From IMG/VR virus record IMGVR_UViG_3300049793_000366, positions 310,001 to 374,000 of that record: a stretch of 64,000 nt of DNA. One strand, written 5' to 3'. Numbering within the stretch: the stretch's first letter is position 1; the number at the start of each line of letters is the position of its first letter. Made by a program: the position numbers and the translations under genes. Under the pieces are notes generated by a model that was given only the letters and a program-made list of their open reading frames with translations, had not been told where the DNA came from and ran no database searches. Shown here in pieces: positions 1,055-61,740 of the stretch.

Positions 1055-1069
1055 TTAACTCTCTTTTTT
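1041..1069. terminator. Bidirectional intrinsic terminator between convergent genes
   Basis: AAAAAGAGAGTTAATTAACTCTCTTTTT inverted repeat. Confidence 0.7.
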
Positions 1070-1641
1070 TATAGTAGCATATTTAAGCTTATAATTCTTT
1101 CCAGTGATGCTATCTCATTTCGAATATCTTCTCTATCTATAACAGGAACACGACTAGTATTTTGATGGAAAATATTACCACCTGGATAAGCATATCTTGT
1201 ACTCTTCACTAAATCCTTTTCTATTTTAGGATATAACTCTCTGAATAAATCGAGAGCATTATGTATTTTAATGTAGTCAGTTAGTATTTGAAAAAAATCA
1301 ACATCGTGTTTACTAAATGTATCGTGTATCTTTGGATTCATAGCGTATGTTTTAACCGCATTTAATATATCCTCTTTGACTATCTCTTCACCTCTCTTAT
1401 TGAGTAAGAGAAGTCTTCTATCTGGCTTAGAGAAGTTTTTTACAAAATAAAATGGCTTATCTAATTTATGTAGATGTGTTATTATTTTCTTAATCTCGGT
1501 ATAGTACCCAATGTCAAAATTTATAAGATAGCTATCGGAATTTGATTCGTATCTAAGTATTGGTCTTGTGTGTATATTGAAACAATACAAACAATCATCC
1601 TTTATACTCCAGCTATTATTTAATATTAATTTATCAAGCAT
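1069..1641 (-). CDS. Hypothetical protein with C-terminal R-motif (RIISLNMLL)
   Basis: 190-aa ORF; no recognisable family. Confidence 0.7.
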   Translation of the reverse strand: MLDKLILNNSWSIKDDCLYCFNIHTRPILRYESNSDSYLINFDIGYYTEIKKIITHLHKLDKPFYFVKNFSKPDRRLLLLNKRGEEIVKEDILNAVKTYAMNPKIHDTFSKHDVDFFQILTDYIKIHNALDLFRELYPKIEKDLVKSTRYAYPGGNIFHQNTSRVPVIDREDIRNEIASLERIISLNMLL

Positions 1642-1723
1642 CTATATTTTACTACTAAAAGTAAGAATGTTTAAATATAATAATAATATATAGTAATAAG
1701 AAATAAAAATACTAAAATACTAG

Positions 1724-3067
1724 ATGTCAGGAATAATTCAGGGTAAAAATGATATAAACGCTGTTGAGGTGCCTACTGATAAGTATCACATTGTTGTGGA
1801 TTTAGATGGTAAGCTTAAGAAGAAGTCATTCGATGGATCAATTGTTGATTTAGAGACTGGTGCCGCATATACAAGTGTTGAGAAGGTTTTCGAGTGTAAT
1901 ATAAACTATGATTTTGATGCAGGATTCACCGCAACAAATCTAACGAGTTTAATGGAACATAAGAATAGTCACATAGGTGCAAGTTTTTCTCATTATCAGA
2001 ATATGCTATGGACTCTATTTGGTGGTAACTTTGATGATGGTGGTTCTGCTTTATTTGAAGGTATGACTTTTTCATCATATGATGAATTAGCAGCTGAGAT
2101 TCAATCTGTTGCTGAAGGTGTTACAAATACTACGGTATTAATATGTTATTATCTAATAGATGGTTCATTACCAAAAGTTAGTTTTCAAGGTAGAAATTCA
2201 ACTTATTGGAGACTAAAAGGTGGTGATAACTATTATGGTAATACAGACTTTAAAACACTTAAATCAATAACACCTACTGGTCAAACATTATCATCAGTAG
2301 CAAGCTTTGTGACTGCTGTTCAAGCACAGTCAGAATTTCCAAATTATACAATGGAAACATTATGGATAACAAATGGTAGGAATTTATATGTAAATGAATC
2401 TAAAGTATCAAGTGACCATCCATTCAAAGGTATGTATGAACTTGGTGGTCCAAGTAGAAGTACTATGAATTTAGCACAGACAGTAGCTACACCACTATCC
2501 ACTTTTCAAGGTGAGTGTACACCTACAAATTATTGGAAATTATTTGCATTAGATAGATTTGGTAGTGGTAACCCTACGGTTGAGCTTAATCTAAGTTTCA
2601 GAGGTAGAGTATATGTTAGAAAATATAGTGTTAATAGTAGTTACTTCGCAATGGTTAGACCATGTGGTATAGATACGTTATTAATTGACTATATTGATAT
2701 TCCAGTTGGGTATAAACTATATGCAGTTTATACTAACTCAAATAATGTAACTAAGAAGGTTAAAGAGATTACATCAGCGGATCTTAAAACAAGACCAATA
2801 GAGGAAGTGAGAGATTTTGAAGGTGGTGGTCAAGGAAATAGTCAGTATTCAACTGGTAGACTTGGTTCTATATTTTTAGAAGAATTCATGACTACTGATT
2901 TAATATCTCGTAACAATACAAGAGCAGTAACAGAAAGAAAAGCATTAAGAGTACATCTGGTTTATGGTAAAGATGGTGTATTTAGTAATTATAGTGATTC
3001 ATACCTTACATTTAATCAAGAGTCATATAAAGGCGTAGGTTACTTTATGGTAAATAAAATTAAATAA
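1724..3067 (+). CDS. Putative late/virion structural protein
   Basis: 447 aa, rich in G/S/T/N; TAATATATA at 1684-1692 upstream. Confidence 0.55.
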   Translation: MSGIIQGKNDINAVEVPTDKYHIVVDLDGKLKKKSFDGSIVDLETGAAYTSVEKVFECNINYDFDAGFTATNLTSLMEHKNSHIGASFSHYQNMLWTLFGGNFDDGGSALFEGMTFSSYDELAAEIQSVAEGVTNTTVLICYYLIDGSLPKVSFQGRNSTYWRLKGGDNYYGNTDFKTLKSITPTGQTLSSVASFVTAVQAQSEFPNYTMETLWITNGRNLYVNESKVSSDHPFKGMYELGGPSRSTMNLAQTVATPLSTFQGECTPTNYWKLFALDRFGSGNPTVELNLSFRGRVYVRKYSVNSSYFAMVRPCGIDTLLIDYIDIPVGYKLYAVYTNSNNVTKKVKEITSADLKTRPIEEVRDFEGGGQGNSQYSTGRLGSIFLEEFMTTDLISRNNTRAVTERKALRVHLVYGKDGVFSNYSDSYLTFNQESYKGVGYFMVNKIK

Positions 3068-5653: not shown

Positions 5654-5984
5654 TATACCATTAAATAGTCTTCAACGGTTTACTTTAGAACTTCTTGATA
5701 TACTTGAATTAAAAAATCAATGTATATTAATGGATGATTATGGTTCTGCTGATGAATGTAGAAACCGAGAGAAAAAGTTATTAGATTCAACAGATGATTC
5801 TATTATAAAGGCTTTTAACTCTGATTTAAGATTTATAGCAAATAATACCGGAATACAATTAGATGAAAGTCGCACATCTGGTTTCTCAACAGTAAAGAAT
5901 ATTAAAAACATACGAAACCTTCTCACATATTATCAATCACTAAGAAACAATAAGATTAACCAAATACTTAAAAAAGATGAATAA
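5619..5984 (+). CDS. UVR-like domain protein with C-terminal R-motif
   Basis: LKNQCILMDDYGSADECRNREKKL; ends RNNKINQIL. Confidence 0.5.
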   Translation: MNRIFKTMIQNNIPLNSLQRFTLELLDILELKNQCILMDDYGSADECRNREKKLLDSTDDSIIKAFNSDLRFIANNTGIQLDESRTSGFSTVKNIKNIRNLLTYYQSLRNNKINQILKKDE

Positions 5985-6957: not shown

Positions 6958-7347
6958 ATGAATATACCAGAAGAGTTAACTAAATTTATCACAGATTGGG
7001 TTTACAATTTACACAATCTGAATAATATTTCGCTTGAGAGTTTGATGAAGTTTACATCTGATTTAAATTATATTAATGATAGATATAAAACTACGTTTAG
7101 TTATGATGATGATACTGTTTGGTTATTTATTGTTGAAATGAAGGAGTGGGAACCAATAGCTTCTGCTGAGAAAGGATTAGTATTCAATGAGGATAACTAT
7201 ATACTTGATTCAGATGGTAGAGTGATTGCTATGAGAGGACAAGGTGATTCAAAAATTAAATCATCTGGGTGTATATGTTTTGAGGTTAAACAACTTAAAA
7301 GAGAACTGAGTATAAATGAAATTACAGATACAGAATCATCCACTTGA
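6958..7347 (+). CDS. Hypothetical protein with C-terminal R-motif (RELSINEI)
   Basis: ORF downstream of TATCTTTG promoter element. Confidence 0.6.
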   Translation: MNIPEELTKFITDWVYNLHNLNNISLESLMKFTSDLNYINDRYKTTFSYDDDTVWLFIVEMKEWEPIASAEKGLVFNEDNYILDSDGRVIAMRGQGDSKIKSSGCICFEVKQLKRELSINEITDTESST

Positions 7348-8014: not shown

Positions 8015-8218
8015 TTGCCTAACTATATAAAGTTAGGTGATGAACTTGTTATTATAGTAGAAGTTCTCAATAAGAAGCGTAGTGGTAAAGGTACTGCTAC
8101 GCAAGTTTACTATAAGATAGAAGATGGTAGATGTTATCATGCTTCCAGATTCAGAAAGATGTCAATCGCAGATTTAAAGGTAATAAACAGAGATAATAAA
8201 TTAAAACAACTACTATGA
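8015..8218 (+). CDS. Hypothetical protein with C-terminal R-motif (RDNKLKQLL)
   Basis: Only a TTG start; frame is open upstream to 7931. Confidence 0.5.
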   Translation: MPNYIKLGDELVIIVEVLNKKRSGKGTATQVYYKIEDGRCYHASRFRKMSIADLKVINRDNKLKQLL

Positions 8219-8823
8219 GAAAAGGATTTGTCGTAAGAGAAAAAGGCTACGAATACAATGATAATTGGTATGACCACGATCCAGGTCAAGATAAATATAC
8301 TGAGCTTTTTAATGATAGGGAAACCGCATTGAAACACGCACAGAAATATACATCTGATTTTCTTGAGGGTCGAAGAGTATATGATTACTTCAACGAGAAA
8401 GACTACTTAGGTAAGTTAAAGAATATTTTAAATAGTGATGAATTCAACATCACACCAGGTACCGATGAATTCAATCAAGTTTGGGAACTTATCAAAGAAG
8501 ACATTGGTGAGGTTCTTGAAGTAGAGATTGAAGACGGTGACCCATGTGTAGTTAGTTACTCAGATGGTACTAAAATGTATTACAAAGATAATGTATTACA
8601 TCGTATTGGTAAACCAGCAATTGAAAGACCTGATGGAACTTGGTCATACTTTTACAAAGGTGCAAAACATCGCGTTGATGGTCCTGCTGAATACAGTGAA
8701 TATTCTGATGAAGGATATTACATAGATGGTGAGTATTACTGGAATATGGATGAGTTTAAAGCAGCAGCACACCAGTGGTTACAAGAACACAGAGATTATC
8801 AAATAGAGAGCGTTATTAAATAA
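8215..8823 (+). CDS. HRxDGPA-repeat protein with C-terminal R-motif
   Basis: LHRIGKPAIE and KHRVDGPAEY repeats typical of large viruses; ends RDYQIESVI. Confidence 0.65.
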   Translation: MRKGFVVREKGYEYNDNWYDHDPGQDKYTELFNDRETALKHAQKYTSDFLEGRRVYDYFNEKDYLGKLKNILNSDEFNITPGTDEFNQVWELIKEDIGEVLEVEIEDGDPCVVSYSDGTKMYYKDNVLHRIGKPAIERPDGTWSYFYKGAKHRVDGPAEYSEYSDEGYYIDGEYYWNMDEFKAAAHQWLQEHRDYQIESVIK

Positions 8824-9440
8824 TGATAACTACTGATGATATCTTAACCGAAGATTACCTATTAAAGATTATTAGGGATCCTTCGCTTATAAAAGCTGAT
8901 TGGAGAGATTTAAAACTGAGGTTGATGTTATCAGACATCGACTCTCAGTTAATTCCTGATATAGATAGTATAAGGTATAAACAAGATTCTTTCTTTAAGA
9001 GAGAAGAACACTATTGGAGTATAGCATCGAAAGTTCGTATTGGTATTATAACTGGTTCTCTATCATTGAAAGCATTTGGATTTATCAGCAGAGCGGCTAA
9101 AGATGTTGATATTATAGTAAGTGATAGAGTAAAGGTAAAAGATTTAAATTTGAATCAACATAGATATCCAGAATCAGATAGTGATTTAGAATCATTGGGT
9201 TATATATCATTTACGAAGTCTGGAATCTTCGGTAGTGTTAAGGGAATGTACGAAGTTGACTTCTTCGAGAATAAAAATGCAACGTTCATTGAGAAAGATG
9301 GTTTAAAATTTCATCACCCATTTGAAGTAATGGATAAGAAATTACAAATATTACAGAACAGAGGAACTAGCGATAGAGTTAAAGATATACAGGACTTTTA
9401 TAGCTTTCGTAATGTTTTAAGAAAAAAATATTTAGTCTGA
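8823..9440 (+). CDS. Putative nucleotidyltransferase (Pol beta superfamily)
   Basis: ITGSLSL...KDVDII (GS/DxD motif) and EVDFF. Confidence 0.55.
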   Translation: MITTDDILTEDYLLKIIRDPSLIKADWRDLKLRLMLSDIDSQLIPDIDSIRYKQDSFFKREEHYWSIASKVRIGIITGSLSLKAFGFISRAAKDVDIIVSDRVKVKDLNLNQHRYPESDSDLESLGYISFTKSGIFGSVKGMYEVDFFENKNATFIEKDGLKFHHPFEVMDKKLQILQNRGTSDRVKDIQDFYSFRNVLRKKYLV

Positions 9441-9683: not shown

Positions 9684-9744
9684 CAAAGAATACAAAAATA
9701 TCAGTCTGGGAATCAGGACTTTAAAAGAAAAAGTAAAATTTTTC

Positions 9745-10020: not shown

Positions 10021-10043
10021 CTTATTCACAAGCAAAAAGCTCT

Positions 10044-17402: not shown

Positions 17403-17787
17403 ACAAATAATCGTAATGCGTAAAGACCTTAATATGCGTAAAGGTAAAATGGTCGCTCAAGGCGCACACGCATCTATGAAAGCAGTTTTAGACATGGGTA
17501 ATTTTAAACGTGAGTCTAAATTAAACTTCGTTCTGGAAATTGAAGAAGAGTCTGCTGTGATGAATTGGTTAGAAGGTAAGTTTACTAAAATTTGTGTATC
17601 AGTTGATTCGGAAGAAGAATTGATGGCAGTTTATGAACAGGCTAAAAATGTTGGTCTTCCTGTTGGTCTTATTACGGACTCTGGACTTACTGAATTCAAT
17701 GGTGTTCCAACCTTAACTTGTTGTGCTATCGGACCCGCCTGGGCAGAAGATATTGACAAAGTTACCAACAATCTAAAACTTCTATAA
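17380..17787 (+). CDS. pth2: Peptidyl-tRNA hydrolase type 2
   Basis: KQIIVMRKDLNMRKGKMVAQGAHA, KICV, DSGLTEF, TCCAIGP. Confidence 0.92.
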   Translation: MHMEKRSKQIIVMRKDLNMRKGKMVAQGAHASMKAVLDMGNFKRESKLNFVLEIEEESAVMNWLEGKFTKICVSVDSEEELMAVYEQAKNVGLPVGLITDSGLTEFNGVPTLTCCAIGPAWAEDIDKVTNNLKLL

Positions 17788-18031: not shown

Positions 18032-18307
18032 ATGTTTTTAAGCTTTAATGAATTAAACTTCACTGACCAAGTTATAATTGACTCATATATAAATATGGGA
18101 TATACACAACTGAATGGTGTTACCGCAAGTAACCCACATCTTTCTAAACAAGAATCCGGTAAGGAACTTATTCTAATGAGAGATTATAGTGGTATGTGGA
18201 CAGAAGCAATAGTTGATAATACACAGCAATTTAAATTACCAATACCGACTATATCATATACACCACAAGAGCTTTTAAGAAAATTACAAATCGATAAATT
18301 AATATAA
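18032..18307 (+). CDS. Hypothetical protein with C-terminal R-motif (RKLQIDKLI)
   Basis: 91-aa ORF. Confidence 0.6.
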   Translation: MFLSFNELNFTDQVIIDSYINMGYTQLNGVTASNPHLSKQESGKELILMRDYSGMWTEAIVDNTQQFKLPIPTISYTPQELLRKLQIDKLI

Positions 18308-21334: not shown

Positions 21335-21552
21335 ATCAATAACGTATTTATTTGTTTTCGCCTATGTTCGGCTTTTATTTCTTCTGGTGTCATTACTTCA
21401 ACCAATGGTGAACCACATGAACCCATATTAGTCCTAATATCTATTAATGAACCTAAATTCCCTATCCAAATATTTGGATCTGCGGTGGGTATCATCGGAG
21501 CGCCAAGATTATCAATTATTTGTGGCATCGACTTCACTTGGTTCTTCTTCAT
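21331..21552 (-). CDS. Hypothetical protein with C-terminal R-motif (RRKQINTLL)
   Basis: Small ORF in the grpE-dnaJ cluster. Confidence 0.55.
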
Positions 21553-38560: not shown

Positions 38561-38996
38561 CATAGATAAAATATTAGAAAAGGTTAAGCAAGAGGGTGAC
38601 TATAAAAAGTTTATCCACCGTGGTTTATTTTGCGAAATTCGAAGGAATGGCGACCTTGGTAATCTATGTGGTTATGTTACTATACCTATGTATTCCAAGC
38701 TTTTGGAAGGTAGCCTTCTTGAAGAAGGTGCTATTGATAATATAGTTAGCCCTCATGGTGGTGTTACGTTTAATAACGTATCGAAGAATGGTGATTACAT
38801 TATTGGATTTGACTGTGGTCACTCTGGTGATTTAATACCAGGTATGGCTAAATTCTCATCATTCACAAATGGTGTATATCGTGATATGGAATATGTAGAG
38901 AATGAAGTTCGTCAAATGGCGAATGATATCGCTGATGCTGATAAAACAATTGAAATTCAGTTCAGAGAAGATAAAATTGATGATATAATAAATTGA
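38553..38996 (+). CDS. Conserved phage protein (CGYV..HGG.T..GFDC.H) with C-terminal R-motif
   Basis: Motifs as listed; ends REDKIDDII. Confidence 0.65.
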   Translation: MANIDKILEKVKQEGDYKKFIHRGLFCEIRRNGDLGNLCGYVTIPMYSKLLEGSLLEEGAIDNIVSPHGGVTFNNVSKNGDYIIGFDCGHSGDLIPGMAKFSSFTNGVYRDMEYVENEVRQMANDIADADKTIEIQFREDKIDDIIN

Positions 38997-39319
38997 CCAA
39001 TGAACACTATAAAGTTGTAGCAAATAACTACAACGGATCCATGTCTATTAACATAGACCCAACTACTGTCACTCATTCTTTTTGGGTATTAGACAAACTC
39101 ATAACAGTTAATATAAATTCAGTTGATGTATTACCACTCGCTAATATAGTGACTATGGTAAATACATTTGGTGAAAAATATTGGCATCAGTTTGATGCTC
39201 AGATAGTTATGGATAGAATTCCATTTGAAATAAGAGCTTATATCGATGAGTATATAAGAGCCTATTCGCGTGAGCTTAAAATAGATGATGTTTTAGAAGA
39301 GCCGGAAAAAGCGGATTAA
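38993..39319 (+). CDS. Hypothetical protein with C-terminal R-motif (RELKIDDVL)
   Basis: 108-aa ORF. Confidence 0.6.
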   Translation: MTNEHYKVVANNYNGSMSINIDPTTVTHSFWVLDKLITVNINSVDVLPLANIVTMVNTFGEKYWHQFDAQIVMDRIPFEIRAYIDEYIRAYSRELKIDDVLEEPEKAD

Positions 39320-41656: not shown

Positions 41657-41876
41657 GTACTGTAAACGGTGTCTAATGACTATGAGTGCATTTTTCAGTG
41701 ATGGGACCAAACTTCATCACGATTATTTATATTGCAGTAGATGTGATAGAACATGGCGAAGCTATGAGTGCGTTACTCCGCATAAAATAAGGAGCCGTAG
41801 GTTACACGACCTTCTACATGGTGTGCGTTTGGATAATTAGATTTTTTTCACTATATTTGTTGTAAAGTAAATAACT

Positions 41877-43301: not shown

Positions 43302-43657
43302 TGGAAATTGTTCTATCTAAAACAGAATTCGAAACAGCTAACGCTCTGAGTAATTACAGAGAGTGTTCTGTTGCTAATTTAAAATTACCAATTGGTGATG
43401 AACGCTATGAGCTTATACGCGAAGGTAATGATAGAGCGCGAATTACTAATGAAAGATTTAAATTCACTATTGTTATTGATAAACCAAAAGCTGGGTATAG
43501 CCGATACAATGAGTGTATTAGATTTATAGATTGTGTTCTTTGTTCTTATGGTCAATACAACGGGTTTGAAAACATTCAGATTAATTTCTGGGCTACCGAA
43601 AAATTAAGCGAAGAAGATAGACGCAATGTTTTATTACATCATGTTCTTGAAGTATGA
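43301..43657 (+). CDS. Hypothetical protein with C-terminal R-motif (RNVLLHHVL)
   Basis: 118-aa ORF. Confidence 0.6.
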   Translation: MEIVLSKTEFETANALSNYRECSVANLKLPIGDERYELIREGNDRARITNERFKFTIVIDKPKAGYSRYNECIRFIDCVLCSYGQYNGFENIQINFWATEKLSEEDRRNVLLHHVLEV

Positions 43658-43938
43658 TTGAACACTATAAATATTATCTCTTACGTGAAACGAGTCGCAT
43701 TTATAAAAAAAATAAAGACGACAGTAAGAATAATGTGTTCAACAATACAATAACCGATTTACTTAGTGACCCTATAAAGTTTGGCTACTCTCTAAGAGAA
43801 GCGTGTAGTCGAGCGCATGAAATACTACTCACCGTAAAATCTAATTCACCAGTAATGAATTATGATGATTTTCTATCAGCAAGTAGAATTCAAAAGATTG
43901 ATAGAATAAATAACCCAGAACCTAAACATGGCTTGTAA
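43654..43938 (+). CDS. Hypothetical protein with C-terminal R-motif (RIQKIDRIN)
   Basis: 94-aa ORF. Confidence 0.55.
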   Translation: MIEHYKYYLLRETSRIYKKNKDDSKNNVFNNTITDLLSDPIKFGYSLREACSRAHEILLTVKSNSPVMNYDDFLSASRIQKIDRINNPEPKHGL

Positions 43939-44278
43939 CTCAATGGGTGCAACTTACAGTTATAATTATTTAAATAGTGAGAAGCTTATCAATTGCTTTA
44001 TGTACGTAGGTAAAGAAGATGATAACTTCAACGGTGATTCATACTACGAAGATTATAATTTATTTATTCAGATAATGAATTCATGTGGTTCAGCTAAAAC
44101 AACTGGTCTAAGATATAGACGGGAAAGCTGGTTTCACAAGCTATTCAGATACGAGCCACAATTTTTCATTAAGAATAAGTGGTACAATCAAAAAGATTTC
44201 GTATCACTCAAAGTAAAAGATACTGATTTCAAAGCTAATCAGAGGCACGATAAATTAAATAGCTTAATCAACTCTTAG
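43928..44278 (+). CDS. Hypothetical protein with C-terminal R-motif (RHDKLNSLI)
   Basis: 116-aa ORF. Confidence 0.6.
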   Translation: MACNSMGATYSYNYLNSEKLINCFMYVGKEDDNFNGDSYYEDYNLFIQIMNSCGSAKTTGLRYRRESWFHKLFRYEPQFFIKNKWYNQKDFVSLKVKDTDFKANQRHDKLNSLINS

Positions 44279-44422
44279 TAGTTCATCTATTTTCTCTAAT
44301 CTACTCTGCATTTTCTTTCTCTGTAATTCAGCGTCACTCGTGATGTTTACGCTAATGGTAGCACAATGAAAGCCTGGTGACATTACGATATCATAAGTGA
44401 ATATTTCTTTAACTGTTACCAT
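44264..44422 (-). CDS. Small protein with C-terminal R-motif (RLEKIDELL)
   Basis: Near-consensus motif supports coding status. Confidence 0.55.
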   Translation of the reverse strand: MVTVKEIFTYDIVMSPGFHCATISVNITSDAELQRKKMQSRLEKIDELLRVD

Positions 44423-44482: not shown

Positions 44483-44938
44483 ATGATAATTTTTGATTTA
44501 TTTATAGTGGTGATGTCTTTAGCTATGCTATTGATATTTATGCCAAGAGTTAGAAAAAAATTTAAAGAAGGATCTTCTGGGATGTGCGCTGGATGCGGCA
44601 TTAACTTAGCTGAGTTATTTACACAATCTATTACTGAAAAAGAAATGGATGATGCAATGAAAGCACATAGAAGAGGTACTTGTGATGCTTGTCAGACGCA
44701 AATAGAGCGAGAAGAACAGCTAAATGAAGTATTCACACCTAAGATTGTGTCCACAATAAAGCGGAAATCCGCAAAAATTGTCCAATATAAGTTCACAACA
44801 ACGATTTTATTTTTCTCGTCCGCAATCTTTGGAGTGATGCCTGTTTCCGGCGATATTAAGCTGGTTTTCAAGCTGTTACAGGTGATTACATTAGGTCTTG
44901 GGTGGACAATTCTTTTTATCTCATTAAAAAAAAGATAA
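44483..44938 (+). CDS. Membrane protein with a Zn ribbon and internal R-motif (REEQLNEVF)
   Basis: TM segments; CAGC..CDAC. Confidence 0.6.
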   Translation: MIIFDLFIVVMSLAMLLIFMPRVRKKFKEGSSGMCAGCGINLAELFTQSITEKEMDDAMKAHRRGTCDACQTQIEREEQLNEVFTPKIVSTIKRKSAKIVQYKFTTTILFFSSAIFGVMPVSGDIKLVFKLLQVITLGLGWTILFISLKKR

Positions 44939-46485: not shown

Positions 46486-46959
46486 ATGTTTATAGGTAAA
46501 ATAAACATATTATTATTCACTAGTATGAGTTCAACTGGTGTAACGCGACAAGAAGTGAAGTATAATATACTTAGCATACTTAGTCGTGCAAATAAAGTAT
46601 TATCACTTGACTCAATCAACCTAAATAAAAGAAATTCAAACAACAACATTGATTTAGAAAATCTTAAGCAAATTAATCCAGTATCTAATGACTTCACTAT
46701 ATATGAACCATATTTTGATTTCATTTTTGTTGGTGATTGGAGTAAACCATTAATATCAAACAATAGGACATACTTCGGTATTTCGGACAGTAAATTCCCA
46801 CTGGCTCTGAAAGATGATGAAAGATATAATATCGTAAAAGTTTATAACAATCATCAGATGATTTTTGTTAATAACTTAGAAACGATAGAGATATCAGAGT
46901 ATTACAGTCTACTGGAACAAGATATTCGTGATTATAATATCAATAAACTTGTAAATTAG
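46486..46959 (+). CDS. Hypothetical protein with C-terminal R-motif (RDYNINKLV)
   Basis: ORF; start uncertain. Confidence 0.6.
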   Translation: MFIGKINILLFTSMSSTGVTRQEVKYNILSILSRANKVLSLDSINLNKRNSNNNIDLENLKQINPVSNDFTIYEPYFDFIFVGDWSKPLISNNRTYFGISDSKFPLALKDDERYNIVKVYNNHQMIFVNNLETIEISEYYSLLEQDIRDYNINKLVN

Positions 46960-47012: not shown

Positions 47013-49823
47013 ATGATAAATTCAAAAACACAGCAAGGATCAATCTATTTTCACGGAACCAATGGTCAACTATTTAATGGTTGTGCTTATATCGAAATTG
47101 GTCAGATATTAGGTACACTATATGCTAAGATGATAGCACAAGTAGACTTAATCAACGGTGTGATTCGAATGTCTCTTACTGATGAAACTATTTCTAAATT
47201 CTCATTAGACGAGAGTGATACAGCAAGAATAAATTCTGAGCTAAGTGATGTAGCAGATAAAGTGAATGATGGTTCTATCGAAGAAGATAGTAATCACACT
47301 ACTTGGGATTTCTATGAGTCAAGCGACTGCACTCAAGATAGATATAGTGTTACTGATGTTGAATACACAGCTAATAAAATATTACAAGCTAATCTTGGTA
47401 ATTCAAGTACACCTCCTCCGGGTTTAATGTCAACAGCAATGGGCATTCATAATCAAAGTGCTTCACAAAATTTAAAAAATAATTTAGGTAATCCATTCTC
47501 TAAGATAGATGATATCTTAGGTCAAGATACTGAGAAGAAAACCACTGAGCGTGATGATGCAATTGATAAAGTGCGTGATGTAGCAAACACTGGTTTAAAG
47601 ATTGGTAGAACCAGTAGAGGTGAATTAGCAGAAGTTGTTTTGAAGCTTTATAGCTTAGATGATTTATGCTATTCTATCCCAGGTACTCGTGTAGTAATGG
47701 TTGAAAGAAAAAAAGCAAACAATCGTGTTGGTAGTAATGAGTTCTATGTAGTTGAAGAAATTATTGAGAACACAGAAGTATATTTAGTTTTATCAAACAG
47801 TGATGATGAAGCAACACCGCGTAAAATACTTTACTCAGATATGAGACAAGACTCAATGAACGGTACTGCTATGCTTAAACACGAAGCATTAGAAGTAGGC
47901 GACTTGATGGATATTCATTTATTAAAAGTTGAACAAAAACCAATCAGCAAACTTATGTCATTATTCGAAGATGAACCAAAAGAAGAAGAGATTGAAGTGA
48001 ACGATACTCACTTAGATAAGTTAAATTCATTATTCGGTGACGATGATGAAACAGAAACACACGAAGAAGAGAAAGAAGAAGAACAACACGAAGAGAATGA
48101 AAGTTCTGTAAATAAAATTGATGAACTTCTTGCGGGTATCGAAGAAAAAGCAGAAGAGAAAGAAACACACGAAGAAGAAGTAAAAGAAGAACCTAAAATA
48201 TCATATGCTGCTCAGATGATTGCTGAGTCTATGAATACAATGAACGCTGATAAAATCGCTGAATTAAAAGAGCGTATCGCAGAGAAACAAAAAGATATTA
48301 AAAAATATCAATACGAAGCTAAATTAGCTGAACAGAGAGCTAAACAATCTGAGACTGATTTAGAAGTTTTATATTCTCGTCTTGGTCAAATGGAACCTAA
48401 GAAACCAGCAAATGGTTATGGCTTCGCAGTTGGTGTAATGAATGAAGAAAATGCAAGCATGGAAGTATTAATCATACGTGCTGCTGATTCATATACACAA
48501 GATGATTTCAAAAACACAGTTATACCAGAAGACGTGAAGAAAGAATTAGCTGAGCTAGGGCTTGAAATCGCAAGTGCTGGTTTAGGTGAGTCTACATGGA
48601 AGCAACCAGGTATCGATGCTGAAACTATTGAGAAGTTAAAAAATGGCGCTCGTATTTCATTGAAAGGTATGTACAAAGCATACCACGAATTAAAACTTGA
48701 CTTAACTAAAGCAGGGTTTGTTCACGATGCTAATCTTGAGTTATACATCGATAAGAAGAAAGAAGAATTATGTGCTTCTATTCAAACTGGTTCAAGTGAA
48801 ATGGATAACGAAATTCGTCAATCAATCGGATTATTCGATGCTGTGAATGAAGTTGCTCCGATGGGAATGGGTGGTAACACTCAAGTGGGACCAAACACAG
48901 TAATGCCATTTGGTAATCCTTACACTACTAATCCAGTGAATGTAAACCCAAATAGTAATGGGATGCAGATTAATCAACAAGGAACACAAACTGTGAAAAC
49001 AGATGATGGCTCTCTTGAAGTAGCAGTTGGTTCATATAGCAACATCGCTGATTTAATTAATTCATCACCTGAGTTACAGAAAGCATGGAATGACGACCAA
49101 GGTGGAATGATTTCTATCGAAGACTTCATGGATGATTCAGATAAAGAAGATATCGAATTAGCTATTCTTATTGACCTTGGCTTTAATCAAGCAACAGGTA
49201 AGAATAACATCACTGTAACAAATACTACTGATAGTGATTGGAGAAATCATAGAGTTATTGTTACTACAACCAATCAGTATTTCAATAAAACAAAAACAGT
49301 AGCAACAGAAGATGCGAATAAATATTCACACATCACTGATTCAACTAAGTTAGAAACTAATAGTGATTATACTACTGTTATCACTAATGATTATAGCGAT
49401 GTTGAAGTATCTGAGAATTTTGATGTTAGAGTTCAACTATTAAATAAGATTAAGTCTAATAGCGAATTTACTAACGGTATCACAGAAGATAACATCAGTA
49501 ACTTTGTATATGAGCTACAAGAGTTAAAAGGTTGGCCACAGATAGACCAATTCGATGGGAATGAGTGGTCTGGTGCTGAAAATTTAGACTTAGAGAACTA
49601 CGAAATCGTAGAAGTGTCCAAAAATCGCGTATCTATCTCTTGTGGTGGAGATTGGCAGTCACCTGCACTTGTCCATATTGGATGTGACGAAAAGGGTAAT
49701 CCAATCGTGTATAATGCTGAGTATCAGGAATATACAGATGGTATGTCGGATAGCGACATTGTGGACGCTTTTTCAATATCCAACATTCGTGACCAAAAAA
49801 TAACGGATATTTCAAAAAATTAA
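47013..49823 (+). CDS. Large acidic multidomain/coiled-coil protein between the MoxR and VWA genes
   Basis: 936 aa; Glu-rich linker, coiled coil, repeated KIDDIL/KLNSLF/KIDELL helices; ends RDQKITDI. Confidence 0.75.
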   Translation: MINSKTQQGSIYFHGTNGQLFNGCAYIEIGQILGTLYAKMIAQVDLINGVIRMSLTDETISKFSLDESDTARINSELSDVADKVNDGSIEEDSNHTTWDFYESSDCTQDRYSVTDVEYTANKILQANLGNSSTPPPGLMSTAMGIHNQSASQNLKNNLGNPFSKIDDILGQDTEKKTTERDDAIDKVRDVANTGLKIGRTSRGELAEVVLKLYSLDDLCYSIPGTRVVMVERKKANNRVGSNEFYVVEEIIENTEVYLVLSNSDDEATPRKILYSDMRQDSMNGTAMLKHEALEVGDLMDIHLLKVEQKPISKLMSLFEDEPKEEEIEVNDTHLDKLNSLFGDDDETETHEEEKEEEQHEENESSVNKIDELLAGIEEKAEEKETHEEEVKEEPKISYAAQMIAESMNTMNADKIAELKERIAEKQKDIKKYQYEAKLAEQRAKQSETDLEVLYSRLGQMEPKKPANGYGFAVGVMNEENASMEVLIIRAADSYTQDDFKNTVIPEDVKKELAELGLEIASAGLGESTWKQPGIDAETIEKLKNGARISLKGMYKAYHELKLDLTKAGFVHDANLELYIDKKKEELCASIQTGSSEMDNEIRQSIGLFDAVNEVAPMGMGGNTQVGPNTVMPFGNPYTTNPVNVNPNSNGMQINQQGTQTVKTDDGSLEVAVGSYSNIADLINSSPELQKAWNDDQGGMISIEDFMDDSDKEDIELAILIDLGFNQATGKNNITVTNTTDSDWRNHRVIVTTTNQYFNKTKTVATEDANKYSHITDSTKLETNSDYTTVITNDYSDVEVSENFDVRVQLLNKIKSNSEFTNGITEDNISNFVYELQELKGWPQIDQFDGNEWSGAENLDLENYEIVEVSKNRVSISCGGDWQSPALVHIGCDEKGNPIVYNAEYQEYTDGMSDSDIVDAFSISNIRDQKITDISKN

Positions 49824-51496: not shown

Positions 51497-51817
51497 ATGA
51501 TAGCAATCAAAGCAAAGTTTATAGGTAGCGATAGTCTTGGGTTTAAACATGGCTATGACTATGATTTACATATACGACCAATACAACTCGTAGCGAATGA
51601 TGTTAATGCTATGAGCATACAACCATTTCCGTTAAACAAAGCTCAAGCTTGTGAATATCAAAGCTGGAATTCATTCACAAAAAATTGGAAAGTCACTGAT
51701 GTAAACGAAGCCGATTTAGCAGAGGGTGTTAAGATTTTTAAAAGTACTTATCATTCAATATTTGAAAATCTAAAATCGGAAATAAGAAACCTCAAAATAA
51801 TTAGGATAATTGATTAA
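51497..51817 (+). CDS. Hypothetical protein with C-terminal R-motif (RNLKIIRII)
   Basis: 106-aa ORF. Confidence 0.6.
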   Translation: MIAIKAKFIGSDSLGFKHGYDYDLHIRPIQLVANDVNAMSIQPFPLNKAQACEYQSWNSFTKNWKVTDVNEADLAEGVKIFKSTYHSIFENLKSEIRNLKIIRIID

Positions 51818-60831: not shown

Positions 60832-60890
60832 GTAATATATCATGATGTTGCATGAATGAAATTTAATATCGATTATTAATATATACAAAT

Positions 60891-61307
60891 ATGAAAAACT
60901 GGAAACAATTTAACGAAGATTTAAACGAGCAACCAAATGTTGACGCTGAGAAACCATCAGAAGATGAAATTAACAGCGACCAAGAGTTTAAAGATGCTAT
61001 TGTTGAAATAGTTCAGAAGTCAGTTAATTCTACTGAGGAATCAGTTATAAGCGAGTTTATAGACTCATATTTAAAGGATCCTGAAACAACAAATATAGAA
61101 GGGTTAATTAATGACTCTGATGTTTGGGATTTCTATGTGAAATGGACATCAGAAATTGATGAAGTTTTAAATGGTATTAAATGGTTTGATGAGATTCCAT
61201 CGGAGAATAACACATATGGTGTTTATGACTATGTTGTTAAATCTACCAGACGTGCTGTTAAAGAAGCAATAAGTGATATTAAAGAAGAGAAGTCTAAGAC
61301 GCAATAG
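60891..61307 (+). CDS. Putative internal head protein (N-terminal MKNWKQFNE)
   Basis: Capsid-targeting-like N-terminus; TAATATATA 5 nt upstream. Confidence 0.55.
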   Translation: MKNWKQFNEDLNEQPNVDAEKPSEDEINSDQEFKDAIVEIVQKSVNSTEESVISEFIDSYLKDPETTNIEGLINDSDVWDFYVKWTSEIDEVLNGIKWFDEIPSENNTYGVYDYVVKSTRRAVKEAISDIKEEKSKTQ

Positions 61308-61740
61308 TTTTAATCTTTCTATCTCTAATGAATATTTCTACTGGTGCGTTCAATTGTTCCTTACTTTCTATTTCATATTCAACTATCCAAGAATCTGTAT
61401 CAATACTATTGTGTGAGTAAGTAACTTCAATCCTAGTAAACTTTAAATTAAAAAATGATGATTGTATAGTCACATCTTTTTTATCGTGTAGATTCATCGA
61501 TAAGTATTTAAGCTCTTGCACAGCATCAAAGTATAATGGATTCGAAGAATCGTTGTATATTTTCAATACAACTGATTCTGAATCTTTATGTATGTGGAAA
61601 GATACGCTATGTATTCCAGCAGAACATATGTGGATATTTACATCCTTATCATAAAGCTTCGCATCAAATAGATTACTATAAATTGGTTCATAGTTAACTA
61701 ATTGTGATGCGGCACTATTTGTGAAGAAAGGTAGTGGCAT
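61294..61740 (-). CDS. Tail-tube-like protein (divergent) with C-terminal R-motif
   Basis: MPLPFF..YEPIYSNLFD N-terminus reminiscent of gp19-like tube proteins; ends RDRKIKTIA. Confidence 0.4.
   Translation of the reverse strand: MPLPFFTNSAASQLVNYEPIYSNLFDAKLYDKDVNIHICSAGIHSVSFHIHKDSESVVLKIYNDSSNPLYFDAVQELKYLSMNLHDKKDVTIQSSFFNLKFTRIEVTYSHNSIDTDSWIVEYEIESKEQLNAPVEIFIRDRKIKTIAS

What the first reader, a model, noticed from the sequence alone, without database searches (positions are those of the whole stretch)
1069..61740. A shared C-terminal helix motif R-x-x-[KQN]-[IL]-[DNEK]-x-[ILV]-[IL] on more than 20 unrelated proteins
Seen at or near C-termini: RIISLNMLL (1069), RNNKINQIL (5619), RELSINEIT (6958), RDNKLKQLL (8015), RDYQIESVI (8215), RKLQIDKLI (18032), RRKQINTLL (21331), RQIKLDILI (26780), RDDVLDELL (29406), RNNNLKQLI (30481), RDNAINQIC (37021), KDILIDGII (38213), REDKIDDII (38553), RELKIDDVL (38993), RSRRLHDLL (41430), RNVLLHHVL (43301), RIQKIDRIN (43654), RHDKLNSLI (43928), RLEKIDELL (44264), RDYNINKLV (46486), RDQKITDIS (47013), RNLKIIRII (51497) and RDRKIKTIA (61294). 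Internal copies: RDLKLRLML (8823), RDLKLEKLL (36383) and REEQLNEVF (44483). It is conserved at protein rather than DNA level, occurs on both strands and on soluble and membrane proteins, and is absent from the recognisable core enzymes and from the N-terminally tagged late proteins. Inference: a genome-wide address tag for one receptor (localisation to a phage compartment, assembly on a scaffold, or a degron/AAA+ adaptor signal).
Basis: partly seen in the sequence, partly recalled or inferred. Interest (0 to 1): 0.86.

Follow-up and report, generated by a model that had tools for sequence, protein, structure and literature searches.

The report
Shared C-terminal tag on huge-phage proteins
About one in six proteins of this huge bacteriophage, nearly all small proteins of unknown function that are probably made early in infection, end in the same nine-residue helical peptide; this looks like a previously undescribed docking or address tag shared by a whole clade of giant phages.

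Summary
All 26 peptides exist. The strict motif hits 13 times in about 19,000 residues, and 11 hits end within 8 residues of a stop (0.5 expected). Shuffled tails give 0.02.

A matrix trained only on relatives flags 16 window ORFs.

Selection is on the protein: Arg and Ile/Leu codons follow genome usage. The tag is R-[DEN]-x-K-[IL]-[ND]-x-[IL]-[LI] plus 0-6 polar residues, with one conserved helix face.

It is modular. DUF6011 homologues occur with and without it, and AlphaFold models it as a separate, lower-confidence helix.

The window comes from a 508-kb phage contig related to the 635-642 kb 'Mahaphage' genomes with predicted Bacteroidetes hosts. In LR745206, 117 of 943 ORFs carry the tag (9 expected). 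It recurs on more than 50 other viral contigs but is absent from T4 and XacN1.

Tagged proteins are small, cytoplasmic, poorly conserved and lack known domains. They sit behind host-sigmaA-type promoters, not the promoter class of the capsid and tail genes.

The receptor is unidentified. An early-protein docking tag is the best reading. Clamp binding and virion packaging are disfavoured.

The parts
5943..5969 (+). Tag RNNKINQIL, 4 aa before the stop of ORF 5619-5984 (121 aa, no Pfam hit)
   Evidence: PSSM 21.6 bits against a 99.9% null of 9.4
8189..8215 (+). Tag RDNKLKQLL, the last 9 residues of ORF 8015-8218 (67 aa)
   Evidence: PSSM 19.2
8791..8817 (+). Tag RDYQIESVI, 1 aa before the stop of ORF 8215-8823 (202 aa, MORN-like repeats)
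   Evidence: 13.8. All 23 homologues keep the tag. AlphaFold models it as a separate helix 193-201 with pLDDT below 60 on a body of about 90.
18278..18304 (+). Tag RKLQIDKLI, the last 9 residues of ORF 18032-18307 (91 aa)
   Evidence: 11.3
21337..21363 (-). Tag RRKQINTLL, 1 aa before the stop of ORF 21331-21552 (73 aa), which overlaps the start of the phage DnaJ gene (20306-21334)
   Evidence: (13.8)
27218..27244 (+). Tag RQIKLDILI, 2 aa before the stop of ORF 26780-27253 (157 aa, DUF6011 protein). It is appended after the zinc-ribbon-like domain through a basic linker.
   Evidence: 12.1. 97 of 120 homologues carry the extension; about 20 end at the domain. At least 8 gains or losses on the tree. 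AlphaFold helix 143-156 at pLDDT 72-75 against 92-96 for the body.
29808..29834 (+). Tag-like RDDVLDELL, 14 aa before the stop of ORF 29406-29879 (157 aa). Near-terminal copy.
   Evidence: 15.5
30886..30912 (+). Tag RNNNLKQLI, the last 9 residues of ORF 30481-30915 (144 aa)
   Evidence: 11.7
37243..37269 (+). Tag RDNAINQIC, 1 aa before the stop of ORF 37021-37275 (84 aa)
   Evidence: 11.4
38964..38990 (+). Tag REDKIDDII, 1 aa before the stop of ORF 38553-38996 (147 aa)
   Evidence: 17.7
39269..39295 (+). Tag RELKIDDVL, 7 aa (acidic tail) before the stop of ORF 38993-39319 (108 aa)
   Evidence: 17.6
44243..44269 (+). Tag RHDKLNSLI, 2 aa before the stop of ORF 43928-44278 (116 aa)
   Evidence: 13.3
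44276..44302 (-). Tag RLEKIDELL, 3 aa before the stop of ORF 44264-44461 (65 aa)
   Evidence: 13.8
46927..46953 (+). Tag RDYNINKLV, 1 aa before the stop of ORF 46486-46959 (157 aa)
   Evidence: 16.3
49788..49814 (+). Tag RDQKITDIS, 2 aa before the stop of ORF 47013-49823 (936 aa, the largest tagged protein)
   Evidence: 11.2. Its homologue in LR745206 (731 aa) ends RDLKLEKILN.
51785..51811 (+). Tag RNLKIIRII, 1 aa before the stop of ORF 51497-51817 (106 aa)
   Evidence: 11.8
61300..61326 (-). Tag RDRKIKTIA, 1 aa before the stop of ORF 61294-61740 (148 aa), just downstream of topoisomerase II
   Evidence: 11.8. The gene in the same position in LR745206 ends RDIKLNSVLD.
1072..1098 (-). Marginal tag RIISLNMLL, the last 9 residues of ORF 1069-1641 (190 aa)
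   Evidence: 7.1; passes the 99% null but not 99.9%
7300..7326 (+). Marginal tag RELSINEIT, 6 aa before the stop of ORF 6958-7347 (129 aa)
   Evidence: 8.2
43885..43911 (+). Marginal tag RIQKIDRIN, 8 aa before the stop of ORF 43654-43938 (94 aa)
   Evidence: 6.4
41790..41816 (+). Marginal tag RSRRLHDLL in ORF 41430-41840. This ORF overlaps ORF 41222-41656 in another frame, so the gene itself is doubtful.
   Evidence: 6.6
38525..38551 (+). Degenerate tag KDILIDGII (Lys in place of the otherwise invariant Arg), 2 aa before the stop of ORF 38213-38560 (115 aa)
   Evidence: 3.8, weak. Orthologues in LR756502 and LR745206 end in RDWRLKEII... and RNWRLGELL....
43622..43648 (+). RNVLLHHVL in ORF 43301-43657.
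   Evidence: 0.4 bits
36689..36757 (-). Two tandem internal tag copies, RDLKLEKLL (aa 27-35) and RHRKLSDIL (aa 41-49), near the N-terminus of ORF 36383-36835 (150 aa)
   Evidence: 18.6 and 15.5
17509..17535 (+). Internal tag-like RESKLNFVL (aa 44-52) in ORF 17380-17787.
   Evidence: 14.9
8904..8930 (+). Weak internal copy RDLKLRLML (aa 28-36 of ORF 8823-9440)
   Evidence: 8.1
44708..44734 (+). Weak internal copy REEQLNEVF in ORF 44483-44938
   Evidence: 8.9

Best explanation
What it is. The motif is a portable C-terminal peptide tag. Its form is R-[D/E/N]-x-K-[I/L]-[N/D]-x-[I/L]-[L/I], followed by 0-6 mostly polar or acidic residues and the stop codon.

How it is built. It folds as a short alpha-helix. 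Its conserved residues (R1, K4, I5, I8, L9, flanked by D2 and N6) lie on one face. Positions 3 and 7 point away and are free to vary.

Where it occurs. It is attached to 16-21 of about 90 ORFs in this window. It is also on 13-20% of ORFs in a clade of AT-rich huge phages whose sequenced members are predicted to infect Bacteroidetes.

What carries it. The carriers are small (median 115 aa), soluble or anchored with the tag on the cytoplasmic side, poorly conserved between related phages, and almost never have a known domain. They lie mainly in transcription units behind host-sigmaA-type promoters, so they are probably early accessory proteins (host take-over or counter-defence candidates).

How it most likely works. 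It acts as a short linear docking motif. The conserved helix face plugs into a groove of one common cytoplasmic partner, so that more than 100 unrelated early proteins are handled by the same machine.

My favoured sub-reading is a tether or degron for an AAA+ protease or chaperone. That would mean either timed removal of early proteins or adaptor-like delivery of their bound targets.

Shown here: existence, enrichment, selection at the protein level, modularity, helical character, clade-wide spread, the class of genes that carry it, and the promoter association.

Inferred: that there is a single receptor, what it is, and what docking leads to.
For: Positional enrichment:
- Window: 11 strict hits against 0.02 in shuffles.
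- LR745206 genome: 71 strict and 117 core C-terminal hits against 0.35 and 5.1.
- An unbiased pattern search recovers the tag.

Protein-level constraint: codon use at R1 and at the I/L positions equals genome-wide usage.

Helix face. In 308 tags the information is concentrated at positions 1, 2, 4, 5, 6, 8 and 9 and is near zero at 3 and 7. AlphaFold gives a helix for the tag in both families modelled. Each has a break or linker before it and lower confidence than the body: 58 and below 50 against about 90, and 72-75 against 92-96.

Modularity:
- DUF6011 homologues at about 57% identity end either at the domain or with the 13-15 aa extension.
- At least 8 state changes on the tree.
- There are perfect internal copies between domains.

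Purifying selection. All 23 homologues of ORF 8215-8823 (45-72% identity) keep the tag.

Clade-wide and specific:
- 65 exact DNA-pattern hits in IMG/VR. Of these, 62 are in open frames and 51 lie within 8 codons of a stop.
- Their flanks hold 161 tags in 826 ORFs, against 13 expected.
- The same pattern in cellular genomes is near a stop in 5 of 120 hits.
- T4 and XacN1 controls give 0.

Carrier class:
- 123 tagged LR745206 proteins hit 4 Pfam families, one of them a false-positive ClpP. 123 length-matched untagged proteins hit 38.
- 90 further tagged proteins give 2 with Pfam hits.
- 2 of 20 tagged window ORFs have an LR745206 homologue, against 30 of 72 untagged.
- There is no paralogy among them.

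Cytoplasmic side. The 7 membrane-anchored carriers have an N-terminal TM segment followed by a K/R cluster.

Timing:
- Tags occur in 51 of 200 genes of TAnnTTTG-type units against 14 of 358 genes of [AT]ATATATA-type units (odds ratio 8.4, p = 1e-13).
- The contrast holds outside the core region and for proteins of 200 aa or less.
- The [AT]ATATATA class directly precedes the terminase, sheath, portal and major capsid genes.
- TAnnTTTG is the sigmaA -7 box of flavobacteria (PMC9723704).
Against: - No receptor was found. Nothing here shows binding.
- The tag profile matches no solved structure or known peptide-receptor pair and no Pfam or PHROG family.
- The promoter classes are motif-based inferences without expression data. 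In the window alone the contrast is not significant (5/15 against 1/15), and it is weaker in the pooled other contigs (odds ratio 1.9).
- Upstream of many tags there is no obvious flexible linker. The tag often continues a longer terminal helix, so it could partly serve the protein's own fold or assembly.
- Classical C-terminal degrons need a fixed distance to the free carboxylate. Here the tail varies from 0 to 8 aa and internal copies exist. If proteolysis is involved, it works through a docking site rather than an ssrA-like end.
Confidence: 0.58

Rival explanations
1. Packaging signal. The tag docks small proteins onto the inside of the prohead or a scaffold, so that they are packed and injected with the DNA. 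Encapsulin cargo-loading peptides work this way.
For: - The docking peptide is C-terminal with a short variable tail.
- The carriers are numerous, small, fast-evolving and effector-like.
- The tail is T4-type contractile (sheath, gp5-like and gp15-like homologues).
- The capsid of a 635-kb genome must be very large.
Against: - Tagged genes are depleted 6-8 fold in units carrying the promoter motif that precedes the capsid, portal, sheath and terminase genes.
- They are nearly absent from the structural region: 7 of 177 ORFs at 110-262 kb.
- Seven carriers are membrane-anchored.
- There are no PHROG structural hits apart from a false-positive ClpP.
- No flexible Gly/Pro/Ala linker is typical before the tag.
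Confidence: 0.1
2. Address tag for a phage-made compartment, condensate or cytoskeletal scaffold in the infected cell, acting as a client-recruitment motif.
For: - It is a genome-wide shared helical motif on cytoplasmic proteins.
- The pattern h-x-x-h-h resembles the amphipathic encapsulation peptides of bacterial microcompartments. This resemblance is from memory and was not tested.
Against: - The proteins one would expect to be concentrated are all untagged: DNA polymerase, UvsX, helicases, topoisomerase II, ligase-like protein and tRNA synthetases.
- No shell, tubulin or chimallin-like gene was looked for or seen in the parts annotated.
Confidence: 0.12
3. Binding motif for a sliding clamp or another replication or transcription hub. 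The tag has the spacing of a PIP box and resembles the T4 gp45-binding tails.
For: - T4 gp43 ends ASLDFLFG and gp55 ends SLDFLYEAND. These have the form h-D-x-h-h near the C-terminus, like [IL]5-[DN]6-x-[IL]8-[LI]9.
- The replication module is T4-like: homologues of gp41, gp43, gp44, gp46/47, UvsX, UvsW and topoisomerase II.
Against: - The polymerase part carrying YGDTDS ends VVMDIFGGFK, and UvsX homologues end D-I-F-G or NFFDKE. That is a different, acidic terminal motif and the better clamp- or SSB-type candidate.
- No replication or transcription enzyme carries the tag. An internal tag-like sequence in the UvsW homologue is the one partial exception.
- More than 100 competing small proteins on one clamp is hard to reconcile with replication.
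- The invariant Arg has no counterpart in clamp motifs.
Confidence: 0.06
4. No shared receptor. The tag is an intrinsic structural element that unrelated small proteins converge on or inherit, for example a helix end that stabilises the protein, caps it against exoproteases, or drives self-association.
For: - The tag often continues a longer terminal helix.
- Its hydrophobic positions follow a 3-4 spacing compatible with helix packing.
- The native C-terminal helix of ClpP (RYGMIDEIL) matches the relaxed pattern by chance.
Against: - An invariant Arg and a 66% Lys at fixed spacing on more than 300 unrelated proteins are not needed for generic helix stability.
- AlphaFold does not pack the tag with confidence onto either body.
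- Close DUF6011 homologues are intact without it.
- It is confined to one phage clade and, within it, to one promoter class.
Confidence: 0.1
5. Artefact of composition, gene calling or a DNA-level element at gene ends. Candidates are an AT-rich codon bias upstream of the next start, or a repeat or regulatory site read through in one frame.
For: - The genome has 33% G+C, so K, N, I, L, D and E are common.
- Gene ends overlap the next gene's initiation region.
Against: - Shuffles that keep the composition of the last 25 residues give 0.02 against 11, and 0.35 against 71.
- Arg is coded by both codon families at genome-typical frequencies.
- Rejected overlapping ORFs give 3 hits in 725.
- T4 at 34% G+C gives 0.
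- The tag is conserved in orthologues.
Confidence: 0.01

Closest known systems
Encapsulin cargo-loading peptides and bacterial-microcompartment encapsulation peptides
   Same: A short peptide at a protein terminus, shared by otherwise unrelated proteins, docks them to one partner. The microcompartment peptides are amphipathic helices with an h-x-x-h-h pattern. This comparison is from my own knowledge and was not tested.
   Different: - The consensus is different.
- An invariant Arg and a conserved Lys lie in the binding face.
- No Gly/Pro-rich linker precedes the tag.
- There are more than 100 carriers per genome instead of a handful.
- The carriers are not enzymes.
- The carriers are not co-regulated with the capsid genes.
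Clamp-binding tails (PIP box; T4 gp43 and gp55 C-termini)
   Same: A hub motif at the extreme C-terminus of many different proteins. The h-D-x-h-h core and the few trailing residues resemble T4 ASLDFLFG and SLDFLYEAND.
   Different: - The residues are aliphatic rather than aromatic.
- There is an extra invariant Arg four residues upstream.
- The tag is absent from the polymerase and other replisome proteins, which carry an acidic D-I-F-G type tail instead.
Adaptor tethers and degrons of AAA+ proteases (SspB ClpX-binding tail, ssrA, MuA C-terminus)
   Same: A C-terminal peptide hands a protein, or its cargo, to an unfoldase. Short-lived early regulators are common in phages such as lambda. This comparison is from my own knowledge.
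   Different: - Those signals are not helical motifs with this spacing.
- ssrA-type signals need the free carboxylate at a fixed distance.
- No phage is known to put one such signal on more than 10% of its proteins.
C-terminal translocation signals of Dot/Icm and other type IV secretion effectors; poxvirus PRANC/F-box ends
   Same: A large, fast-evolving repertoire of otherwise unrelated accessory proteins is marked by one C-terminal signal that connects them to a single machine.
   Different: - Those signals are compositional (Glu-rich, about 20-35 aa) or whole domains (about 50 aa), not a 9-residue helix.
- They occur in cellular pathogens or eukaryotic viruses, and the machines differ.
UVR domain (PF02151) C-termini
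   Same: The sequence R-D-x-I-x-x-L near a C-terminus looks alike at first sight. Two window proteins (204-797 and 26344-26724) end this way.
   Different: - The Arg-to-Ile spacing is shorter by one residue.
- It is preceded by the Y-E-x-A-A helix hairpin.
- Pfam detects UVR only in the untagged nuclease and in none of the tagged proteins.

Membership tests
PIP-box / T4 gp45-binding C-terminal tail | Core Q-x-x-h-x-x-a-a or (S/T)-L-D-F-L-(F/Y), with aromatic residues, at a protein terminus | tested here: inconclusive
   The spacing and the h-D-x-h-h core agree with T4 gp43 and gp55. However, positions 8 and 9 are I/L/V in more than 95% of tags, and position 2 is D/E/N rather than Q.
PIP-box / T4 gp45-binding C-terminal tail | Carried by the replicative polymerase and other replisome or late-transcription proteins | tested here: not met
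   The PolB part with YGDTDS ends VVMDIFGGFK and UvsX ends ...DIFG. The homologues of gp41, gp44, gp46, gp47 and topoisomerase II are untagged.
PIP-box / T4 gp45-binding C-terminal tail | Binds the clamp's hydrophobic pocket | not testable with these tools
   No complex prediction was available. The clamp gene was not identified by BLAST.
Encapsulin cargo-loading peptide / virion packaging signal | C-terminal peptide after a flexible linker, on cargo made together with the shell | tested here: not met
   - The location is C-terminal.
- Residues before the tag are not linker-like.
- Tagged genes avoid the promoter class and region of the capsid genes.
Bacterial-microcompartment encapsulation peptide | Amphipathic helix of about 18 aa on enzymes, in a genome that encodes BMC shell proteins | not tested
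   - The helix is shorter (9-13 aa) and the carriers are not enzymes.
- The whole LR745206 proteome was not scanned for shell-protein domains.
ssrA-type / ClpX C-terminal degron | Recognition of the last residues with the free carboxylate at a fixed position | tested here: not met
   The tail after the motif varies from 0 to 8 aa, and 12 strict copies are internal.
UVR domain (PF02151) | Match to the Pfam model; helix hairpin with Y-E-x-A-A ... R-D-x-I-x-x-L | tested here: not met
   UVR is found only in untagged proteins. No tagged protein matches.
Type IX secretion C-terminal domain (Bacteroidota) | Beta-sandwich domain of 70-100 aa on proteins with a signal peptide | tested here: not met
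   - The tag is 9-13 aa.
- The carriers lack signal peptides or have the tag on the cytoplasmic side.
- CHU_C was found only on an untagged protein of LR745206.
Mimic of the far C-terminal helix of primary sigma factors | Similarity to ...R-S-x-x-L-x-x-F-L-[DE] (recalled from memory) and binding to the RNA polymerase beta-flap | tested here: inconclusive
   The tag profile against all PDB sequences, which include sigma70, returned no sigma factor at E up to 10. Binding is not testable here.
Any curated protein family (Pfam, PHROGs) | Significant match covering the tag | tested here: not met
   No family covers the C-terminal motif in 20 window, 123 LR745206 or 90 IMG/VR tagged proteins.

The most novel reading that the evidence does not exclude
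The tag is the constant 'handle' of a very large, fast-evolving set of early phage proteins, more than 100 per genome. Each variable body would bind a different host target, such as a defence or housekeeping protein. The shared helix would tether it to one host or phage AAA+ protease or chaperone. That would amount to a phage-encoded targeted-degradation or sorting system, comparable in logic to viral F-box/PRANC proteins or to SspB, and not known for any bacteriophage.
Probability: 0.2. Interest if true: 0.95.

Novelty: new variant of a known kind. Interest (0 to 1): 0.8.

Why it matters
Huge phages carry hundreds of genes with no detectable relatives, and there is almost no handle on what those genes do. 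A single peptide that marks 13-20% of the proteins would be such a handle, for four reasons.
- It marks precisely the small, variable, domain-less proteins behind host-type promoters.
- It defines a functional class in the dark part of these genomes.
- It predicts one partner protein that can be fished out with a synthetic peptide.
- It gives a sequence signature to recognise this phage clade, and its probable early genes, in metagenomes.

If the partner is a protease, a chaperone or a sorting device, this would be the first proteome-wide targeting signal described in a bacteriophage. It could also be reused as a tag in Bacteroidota.

Searches of the held literature found no description of it.

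Tried and rejected
1. DNA-level element or composition artefact. Rejected by codon usage, tail shuffles, rejected-ORF controls and the T4 control.

2. Hidden paralogy of the carriers. No BLASTP hits among them after trimming the tag.

3. UVR domain. The spacing is different and Pfam finds it only on untagged proteins.

4. Known structure or peptide. The profile of 45 tags against all PDB sequences returned only a chance match to an engineered Protein A helix.

5. Sigma-factor tail mimic. Not retrieved in the same search.

6. Clamp-binding motif. The polymerase and UvsX carry another tail.

7. ClpP as a tagged protein. This is a false positive; its native terminal helix fits the relaxed regex.

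8. Membrane-targeting helix. The tag keeps acidic or amide residues at positions 2 and 6, is net neutral, and some carriers already have a TM anchor.

9. Hsp70-type extended binding site. The phage has DnaJ and a relative has GrpE. The conservation period of 3-4 residues fits a helix, not an extended strand.

10. Nascent-chain or termination signal. The distance to the stop is not fixed.

11. Fold searches of the two modelled carriers gave no significant PDB match.

12. Candidate neighbours in the window gave no lead:
- the AAA-like protein at 45023-46165;
- the peptidase-T-like protein at 51838-52968;
- the DUF2201 protein at 49884-51449.

13. Megablast of 16 kb of the window against phage records found nothing.

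Full report
WHAT THE WINDOW IS

The window has 33% G+C. It carries:
- 21 tRNA genes;
- three aminoacyl-tRNA-synthetase-like genes, a RecA/UvsX gene, a topoisomerase II large subunit, DnaJ, PhoH, a glutamine-synthetase-like gene, a PLP enzyme and a DUF2201 VWA/metallopeptidase protein;
- many small ORFs without any family match.

It is positions 300,001-364,000 of the viral contig IMGVR_UViG_3300049793_000366, which is 507,910 bp long.

Its nearest records are two uncultured phages: LR745206.1 (634,780 bp) and LR756502.1 (642,428 bp). Their topoisomerase II is 68-69% identical to the window's.

Genomes of 634, 636 and 642 kb are the 'Mahaphage' genomes of Al-Shayeb et al. 2020, predicted to replicate in Bacteroidetes (PMC7162821). 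Matching the LR records to that paper rests on their lengths.

A Bacteroidota host also fits two other observations. A relative encodes a protein with a CHU_C type IX secretion domain and SprB repeats. The promoter motifs described below point the same way.

Every listed peptide is present. The motifs themselves lie 0-14 residues before the stop.

Enrichment in the window:
Eleven of those end within 8 residues of the C-terminus, against 0.54 expected.
- Shuffling the last 25 residues of each protein keeps local composition. It gives a mean of 0.02 and a maximum of 1 in 1000 trials.
- N-terminal and mid-protein windows give none.

- In a complete related genome I enumerated all gapped three-residue patterns and asked which are enriched in the last 17 residues. 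All the top ones are pieces of the tag. R...h..h has 185 of its 586 occurrences in 4.3% of the positions, p = 1.6e-103.
- I trained a position matrix on 260 tags from relatives only and scored the window. Sixteen ORFs exceed the 99.9% null, where 0.1 is expected.

The constraint is on the protein:
- In the window the invariant Arg is coded by AGA, AGG, CGC, CGA and CGT.
- In LR745206, codon frequencies at Arg-1 and at the Ile/Leu positions equal the genome-wide ones.
- ORFs rejected as overlapping and non-coding carry the motif in 3 of 725 cases.

ANATOMY

From 308 non-redundant tags in 2006 ORFs:

| Position | Residues |
|---|---|
| 1 | Arg 100% (fixed by the search pattern) |
| 2 | D 50, E 23, N 14% |
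| 3 | free |
| 4 | K 66% |
| 5 | I 66, L 33% |
| 6 | N 39, D 27% |
| 7 | nearly free |
| 8 | I 62, L 30, V 6% |
| 9 | L 78, I 17% |
| after 9 | 0-6 (at most 8) mostly N/D/K/E/G residues, then the stop |

Residues upstream carry under 0.7 bit each, so there is no hidden conserved domain.

The alternation of conserved and free positions has the period of an alpha-helix. At 100 degrees per residue, K4, I8, R1, I5, L9, D2 and N6 form one continuous face. Positions 3 and 7 point the other way. This is my inference.

AlphaFold models of two carriers, built with alignments, agree.
- ORF 8215-8823: the body is at pLDDT about 90. The tag is a separate helix, residues 193-201, after a break at 192. Its pLDDT is 58, falling below 50.
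- DUF6011 protein: the body is at 92-96. A linker at 66 follows, then a helix at 143-156 that contains the tag, at 72-75.

IT IS A MODULE

The DUF6011 protein (26780-27253) has 318 homologues.
- Among the best 120, 97 end with an extension of 13-15 residues, typically ...SK.EKRDKFLELIL[GSA].
- About 20 close homologues (about 57% identity) stop right after the conserved G-x-G-P-E-C motif.
- On a tree built without the tail, the state changes at least 8 times.
- Homologues in cultured alphaproteobacterial phages align only up to residue about 135, that is, without the tag.

ORF 8215-8823 has 23 homologues at 45-72% identity. Those on long contigs sit on contigs of 617-711 kb. All keep the tag, apart from one C-terminally truncated sequence, P0137.

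Strict copies also occur internally: 12 in LR745206, for example RDKKIDHILNG at residue 201 of a 536-residue UvsW-like helicase. In the window, two tandem copies sit near the N-terminus of ORF 36383-36835.

SPREAD

| Sequence set | C-terminal tags | Expected or comparison |
|---|---|---|
| LR745206, 943 ORFs, strict regex | 71 of 83 hits | 3.7 |
| LR745206, 943 ORFs, core pattern | 117 of 197 hits | 8.7 |
| Sampled regions of LR756502, LR756504 and other large contigs | 4-21% of ORFs | about 0.3-2% |
| IMG/VR, one exact codon pattern for R-D-x-K-I-[DN]-x-I-L | 51 of 65 hits within 8 codons of a stop; 62 in open frames | 64 stretches on more than 50 contigs of 5-476 kb |
| The 826 ORFs around those hits | 161 | 13 |
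| Cellular genomes, same pattern | 5 of at least 120 hits lie next to a stop | 104 of them in open frames |
| 50 kb of T4 (34% G+C) and of Xanthomonas phage XacN1 | 0 | |

WHO CARRIES IT

- Size: tagged proteins are short, median 115 against 159 residues.
- Known domains in LR745206: the 123 tagged proteins match only 4 Pfam families. One is ClpP, whose native terminal helix RYGMIDEIL fits the relaxed pattern and is a false positive. The 123 length-matched untagged proteins match 38 families.
- PHROGs adds no virion protein.
- Of 90 further tagged proteins from IMG/VR, 2 have Pfam hits.
- In the window, only the DUF6011 protein among 20 tagged ORFs has a Pfam hit. Every recognisable enzyme is untagged.
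- Conservation: 2 of 20 tagged window ORFs have a homologue in LR745206, against 30 of 72 untagged.
- There is no paralogy among the carriers.
- Localisation: they are mostly soluble. The seven membrane-anchored carriers in LR745206 have one N-terminal TM segment followed by a Lys/Arg cluster. By the positive-inside rule, this places the tagged C-terminus in the cytoplasm.

WHEN THEY ARE PROBABLY MADE

Two motifs dominate intergenic regions in LR745206.

Class A is [AT]ATATATA[AC].
- It lies directly upstream of the homologues of the large terminase, tail sheath, portal and major capsid protein.
- It also precedes UvsX, UvsW, topoisomerase II and gp46.

Class B is TA-n-n-TTTG, often TATATTTGTA. 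This is the -7 box of sigmaA in flavobacteria (PMC9723704).

I propagated each motif along co-directional genes and counted tags:

| Gene set | Class B | Class A | Statistic |
|---|---|---|---|
| All LR745206 units | 51 of 200 | 14 of 358 | odds ratio 8.4, p = 1.2e-13 |
| Outside the structural/replication region | 49/190 | 14/253 | p = 2e-9 |
| Proteins of 200 residues or less | 46/149 | 14/215 | p = 1e-9 |
| Other contigs, pooled | 53/217 | 64/448 | odds ratio 1.9, p = 0.0016 |
| Window alone | 5/15 | 1/15 | not significant |

The 110-262 kb region, which holds the structural and replication genes, has 7 tags in 177 ORFs.

I infer that tagged genes are mostly read by unmodified host polymerase, that is, early. 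There are no expression data.

WHAT IT MOST LIKELY DOES

These properties are the signature of a short linear docking motif read by a common partner in the cytoplasm:
- a one-faced helix;
- an invariant Arg;
- portability;
- tolerance of a few trailing residues and of internal positions;
- retention on bodies that otherwise diverge beyond recognition.

What narrows the partner:
- The carriers are early-type accessory proteins, and the replication, recombination, translation and structural proteins are untagged. Targeting of the replication machinery to a compartment is therefore unlikely.
- Packaging into proheads is unlikely for the same reason, because carriers are not co-regulated with head genes.
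- Clamp binding was attractive. T4 gp43 and gp55 end in ASLDFLFG and SLDFLYEAND, which is the same h-D-x-h-h core. But the polymerase part with YGDTDS ends VVMDIFGGFK, and UvsX homologues end in D-I-F-G or N-F-F-D-K-E. That is a second, acidic terminal motif and the better candidate for a replisome hub.

What remains is a hub for early proteins. I favour a tether or degron for an AAA+ protease or chaperone, giving either timed removal or adaptor-like delivery. This is by analogy with unstable early regulators of lambda and with the SspB tail (my own knowledge). It is inference, and the variable tail rules out an ssrA-like end recognition.

COMPARISON WITH THE KNOWN, AND NOVELTY

No curated family, solved structure or paper in the held library describes this motif.

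In kind, it belongs with terminal targeting or docking peptides: encapsulin and microcompartment peptides, clamp-binding tails, protease tethers and type IV secretion signals. It fails the testable defining features of each (see the membership table).

A single tag on 13-20% of a phage's proteins, confined to its variable early-type genes and shared by a whole clade of huge phages, has no precedent that I could find.

I rate it a new variant of a known kind. The more radical reading is a phage-encoded adaptor repertoire for targeted degradation or sorting. I give that about 0.2.

LIMITS

- Gene calls are a greedy longest-ORF set, not a trained predictor.
- Promoter classes are motif-based.
- The count of control proteins with Pfam hits is known only as the number of families.
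- The clamp gene was not identified.
- No complex prediction could be run.

Noticed in passing
window 34950-36176 (+); LR745206 130568-131992 (-), 245176-246396 (+), 445044-446018 (-), 526083-526979 (+): There is a second shared C-terminal motif, an acidic run ending in D-[IF]-F-[GS] or D-D-F-F. It occurs on these proteins:
- the RecA/UvsX homologues (the window copy ends DADNFFDKE, relatives end ...DIFG or ...DIFS);
- the polymerase part with YGDTDS (ends VVMDIFGGFK);
- two other proteins.

It resembles the T4 clamp-binding tails and SSB-type tails, so it is a likely replisome hub motif distinct from the tag.
   Followed up: partly
window 26747-26760, 28092-28105, 39340-39353, 46967-46980, 51820-51833 (+); class A sites upstream of 1724, 19318(-), 23132, 25587(-), 26344, 32939, 33803(-), 34950, 54599(-), 55488, 55750, 60891: There are two promoter-like motif classes.
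- GTCCGTATATTT[AG]T contains the Bacteroidota sigmaA -7 box TAnnTTTG. It lies 18-46 nt before several starts.
- TAATATATA[AC] precedes the RecA/UvsX gene, PhoH, the 1693-aa protein and others in the window. In LR745206 it precedes the capsid, portal, sheath and terminase genes.

   Followed up: partly
window 9612-18018 and 12073-16075: An array of 21 tRNA genes is interleaved with three aminoacyl-tRNA-synthetase-like genes:
- a class II G/H/P/S/T type with an anticodon-binding domain (12073-13200);
- a class II D/K/N type (13457-14635);
- a weak ArgRS-like gene (14900-16075).

One tRNA call has an undetermined anticodon (11617-11693).
   Followed up: no
window 204-797 (+) and 26344-26724 (+): Two proteins end in a UVR-type helix (YE.AA..R..I..L). 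The first is a bifunctional-nuclease domain plus UVR by Pfam; the second is by eye only. The ending resembles the tag superficially but has a different spacing.
   Followed up: partly
window 18309-19316, 23132-25261, 53520-54596 (+): A three-member paralogous family (about 30% identity) with no Pfam match. It has homologues in LR745206 and LR756502 and is untagged.
   Followed up: no
window 36689-36757 (-), in ORF 36383-36835: Two strong tag copies lie 5 residues apart near the N-terminus of a 150-aa protein (RDLKLEKLL and RHRKLSDIL). This is an unusual architecture. It could be a decoy, a regulator of the same partner, or a mis-called start.
   Followed up: no
window 20306-21552 (-): A full-length phage DnaJ (J domain, CxxCxGxG, C-terminal domain) lies directly downstream of, and overlaps by 4 nt, a tagged 73-aa ORF. 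A relative also encodes GrpE.
   Followed up: no
LR745206 232803-234344 (+) and 130568-131992 (-): The family B DNA polymerase is split into two genes about 100 kb apart on opposite strands. One holds the exonuclease plus the start of the polymerase domain. The other holds the YGDTDS-containing part.
   Followed up: partly
LR745206 120830-122440 (-): The UvsW-like helicase carries a perfect internal tag, RDKKIDHILNG, at residues 201-211.
   Followed up: no
LR745206 25768-27963 (+) (locus L018): A 732-aa phage protein has SprB and PKD-like repeats and a CHU_C type IX secretion signal domain. This supports a Bacteroidota host.
   Followed up: no
window 8215-8823 (+): The tagged 202-aa protein contains MORN-like repeats (YYKNNVLHR.GGPA...). 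Foldseek gives only weak, non-significant MORN1 matches.
   Followed up: partly
locus L206 and loci L119, L133, L197 (cellular genome collection): A few contigs binned into bacterial MAGs, among them a Bacteroidota MAG, carry C-terminal tags. L206 has 3 in 9 ORFs. These are probably mis-binned pieces of tag-bearing phages and could help assign hosts.
   Followed up: no
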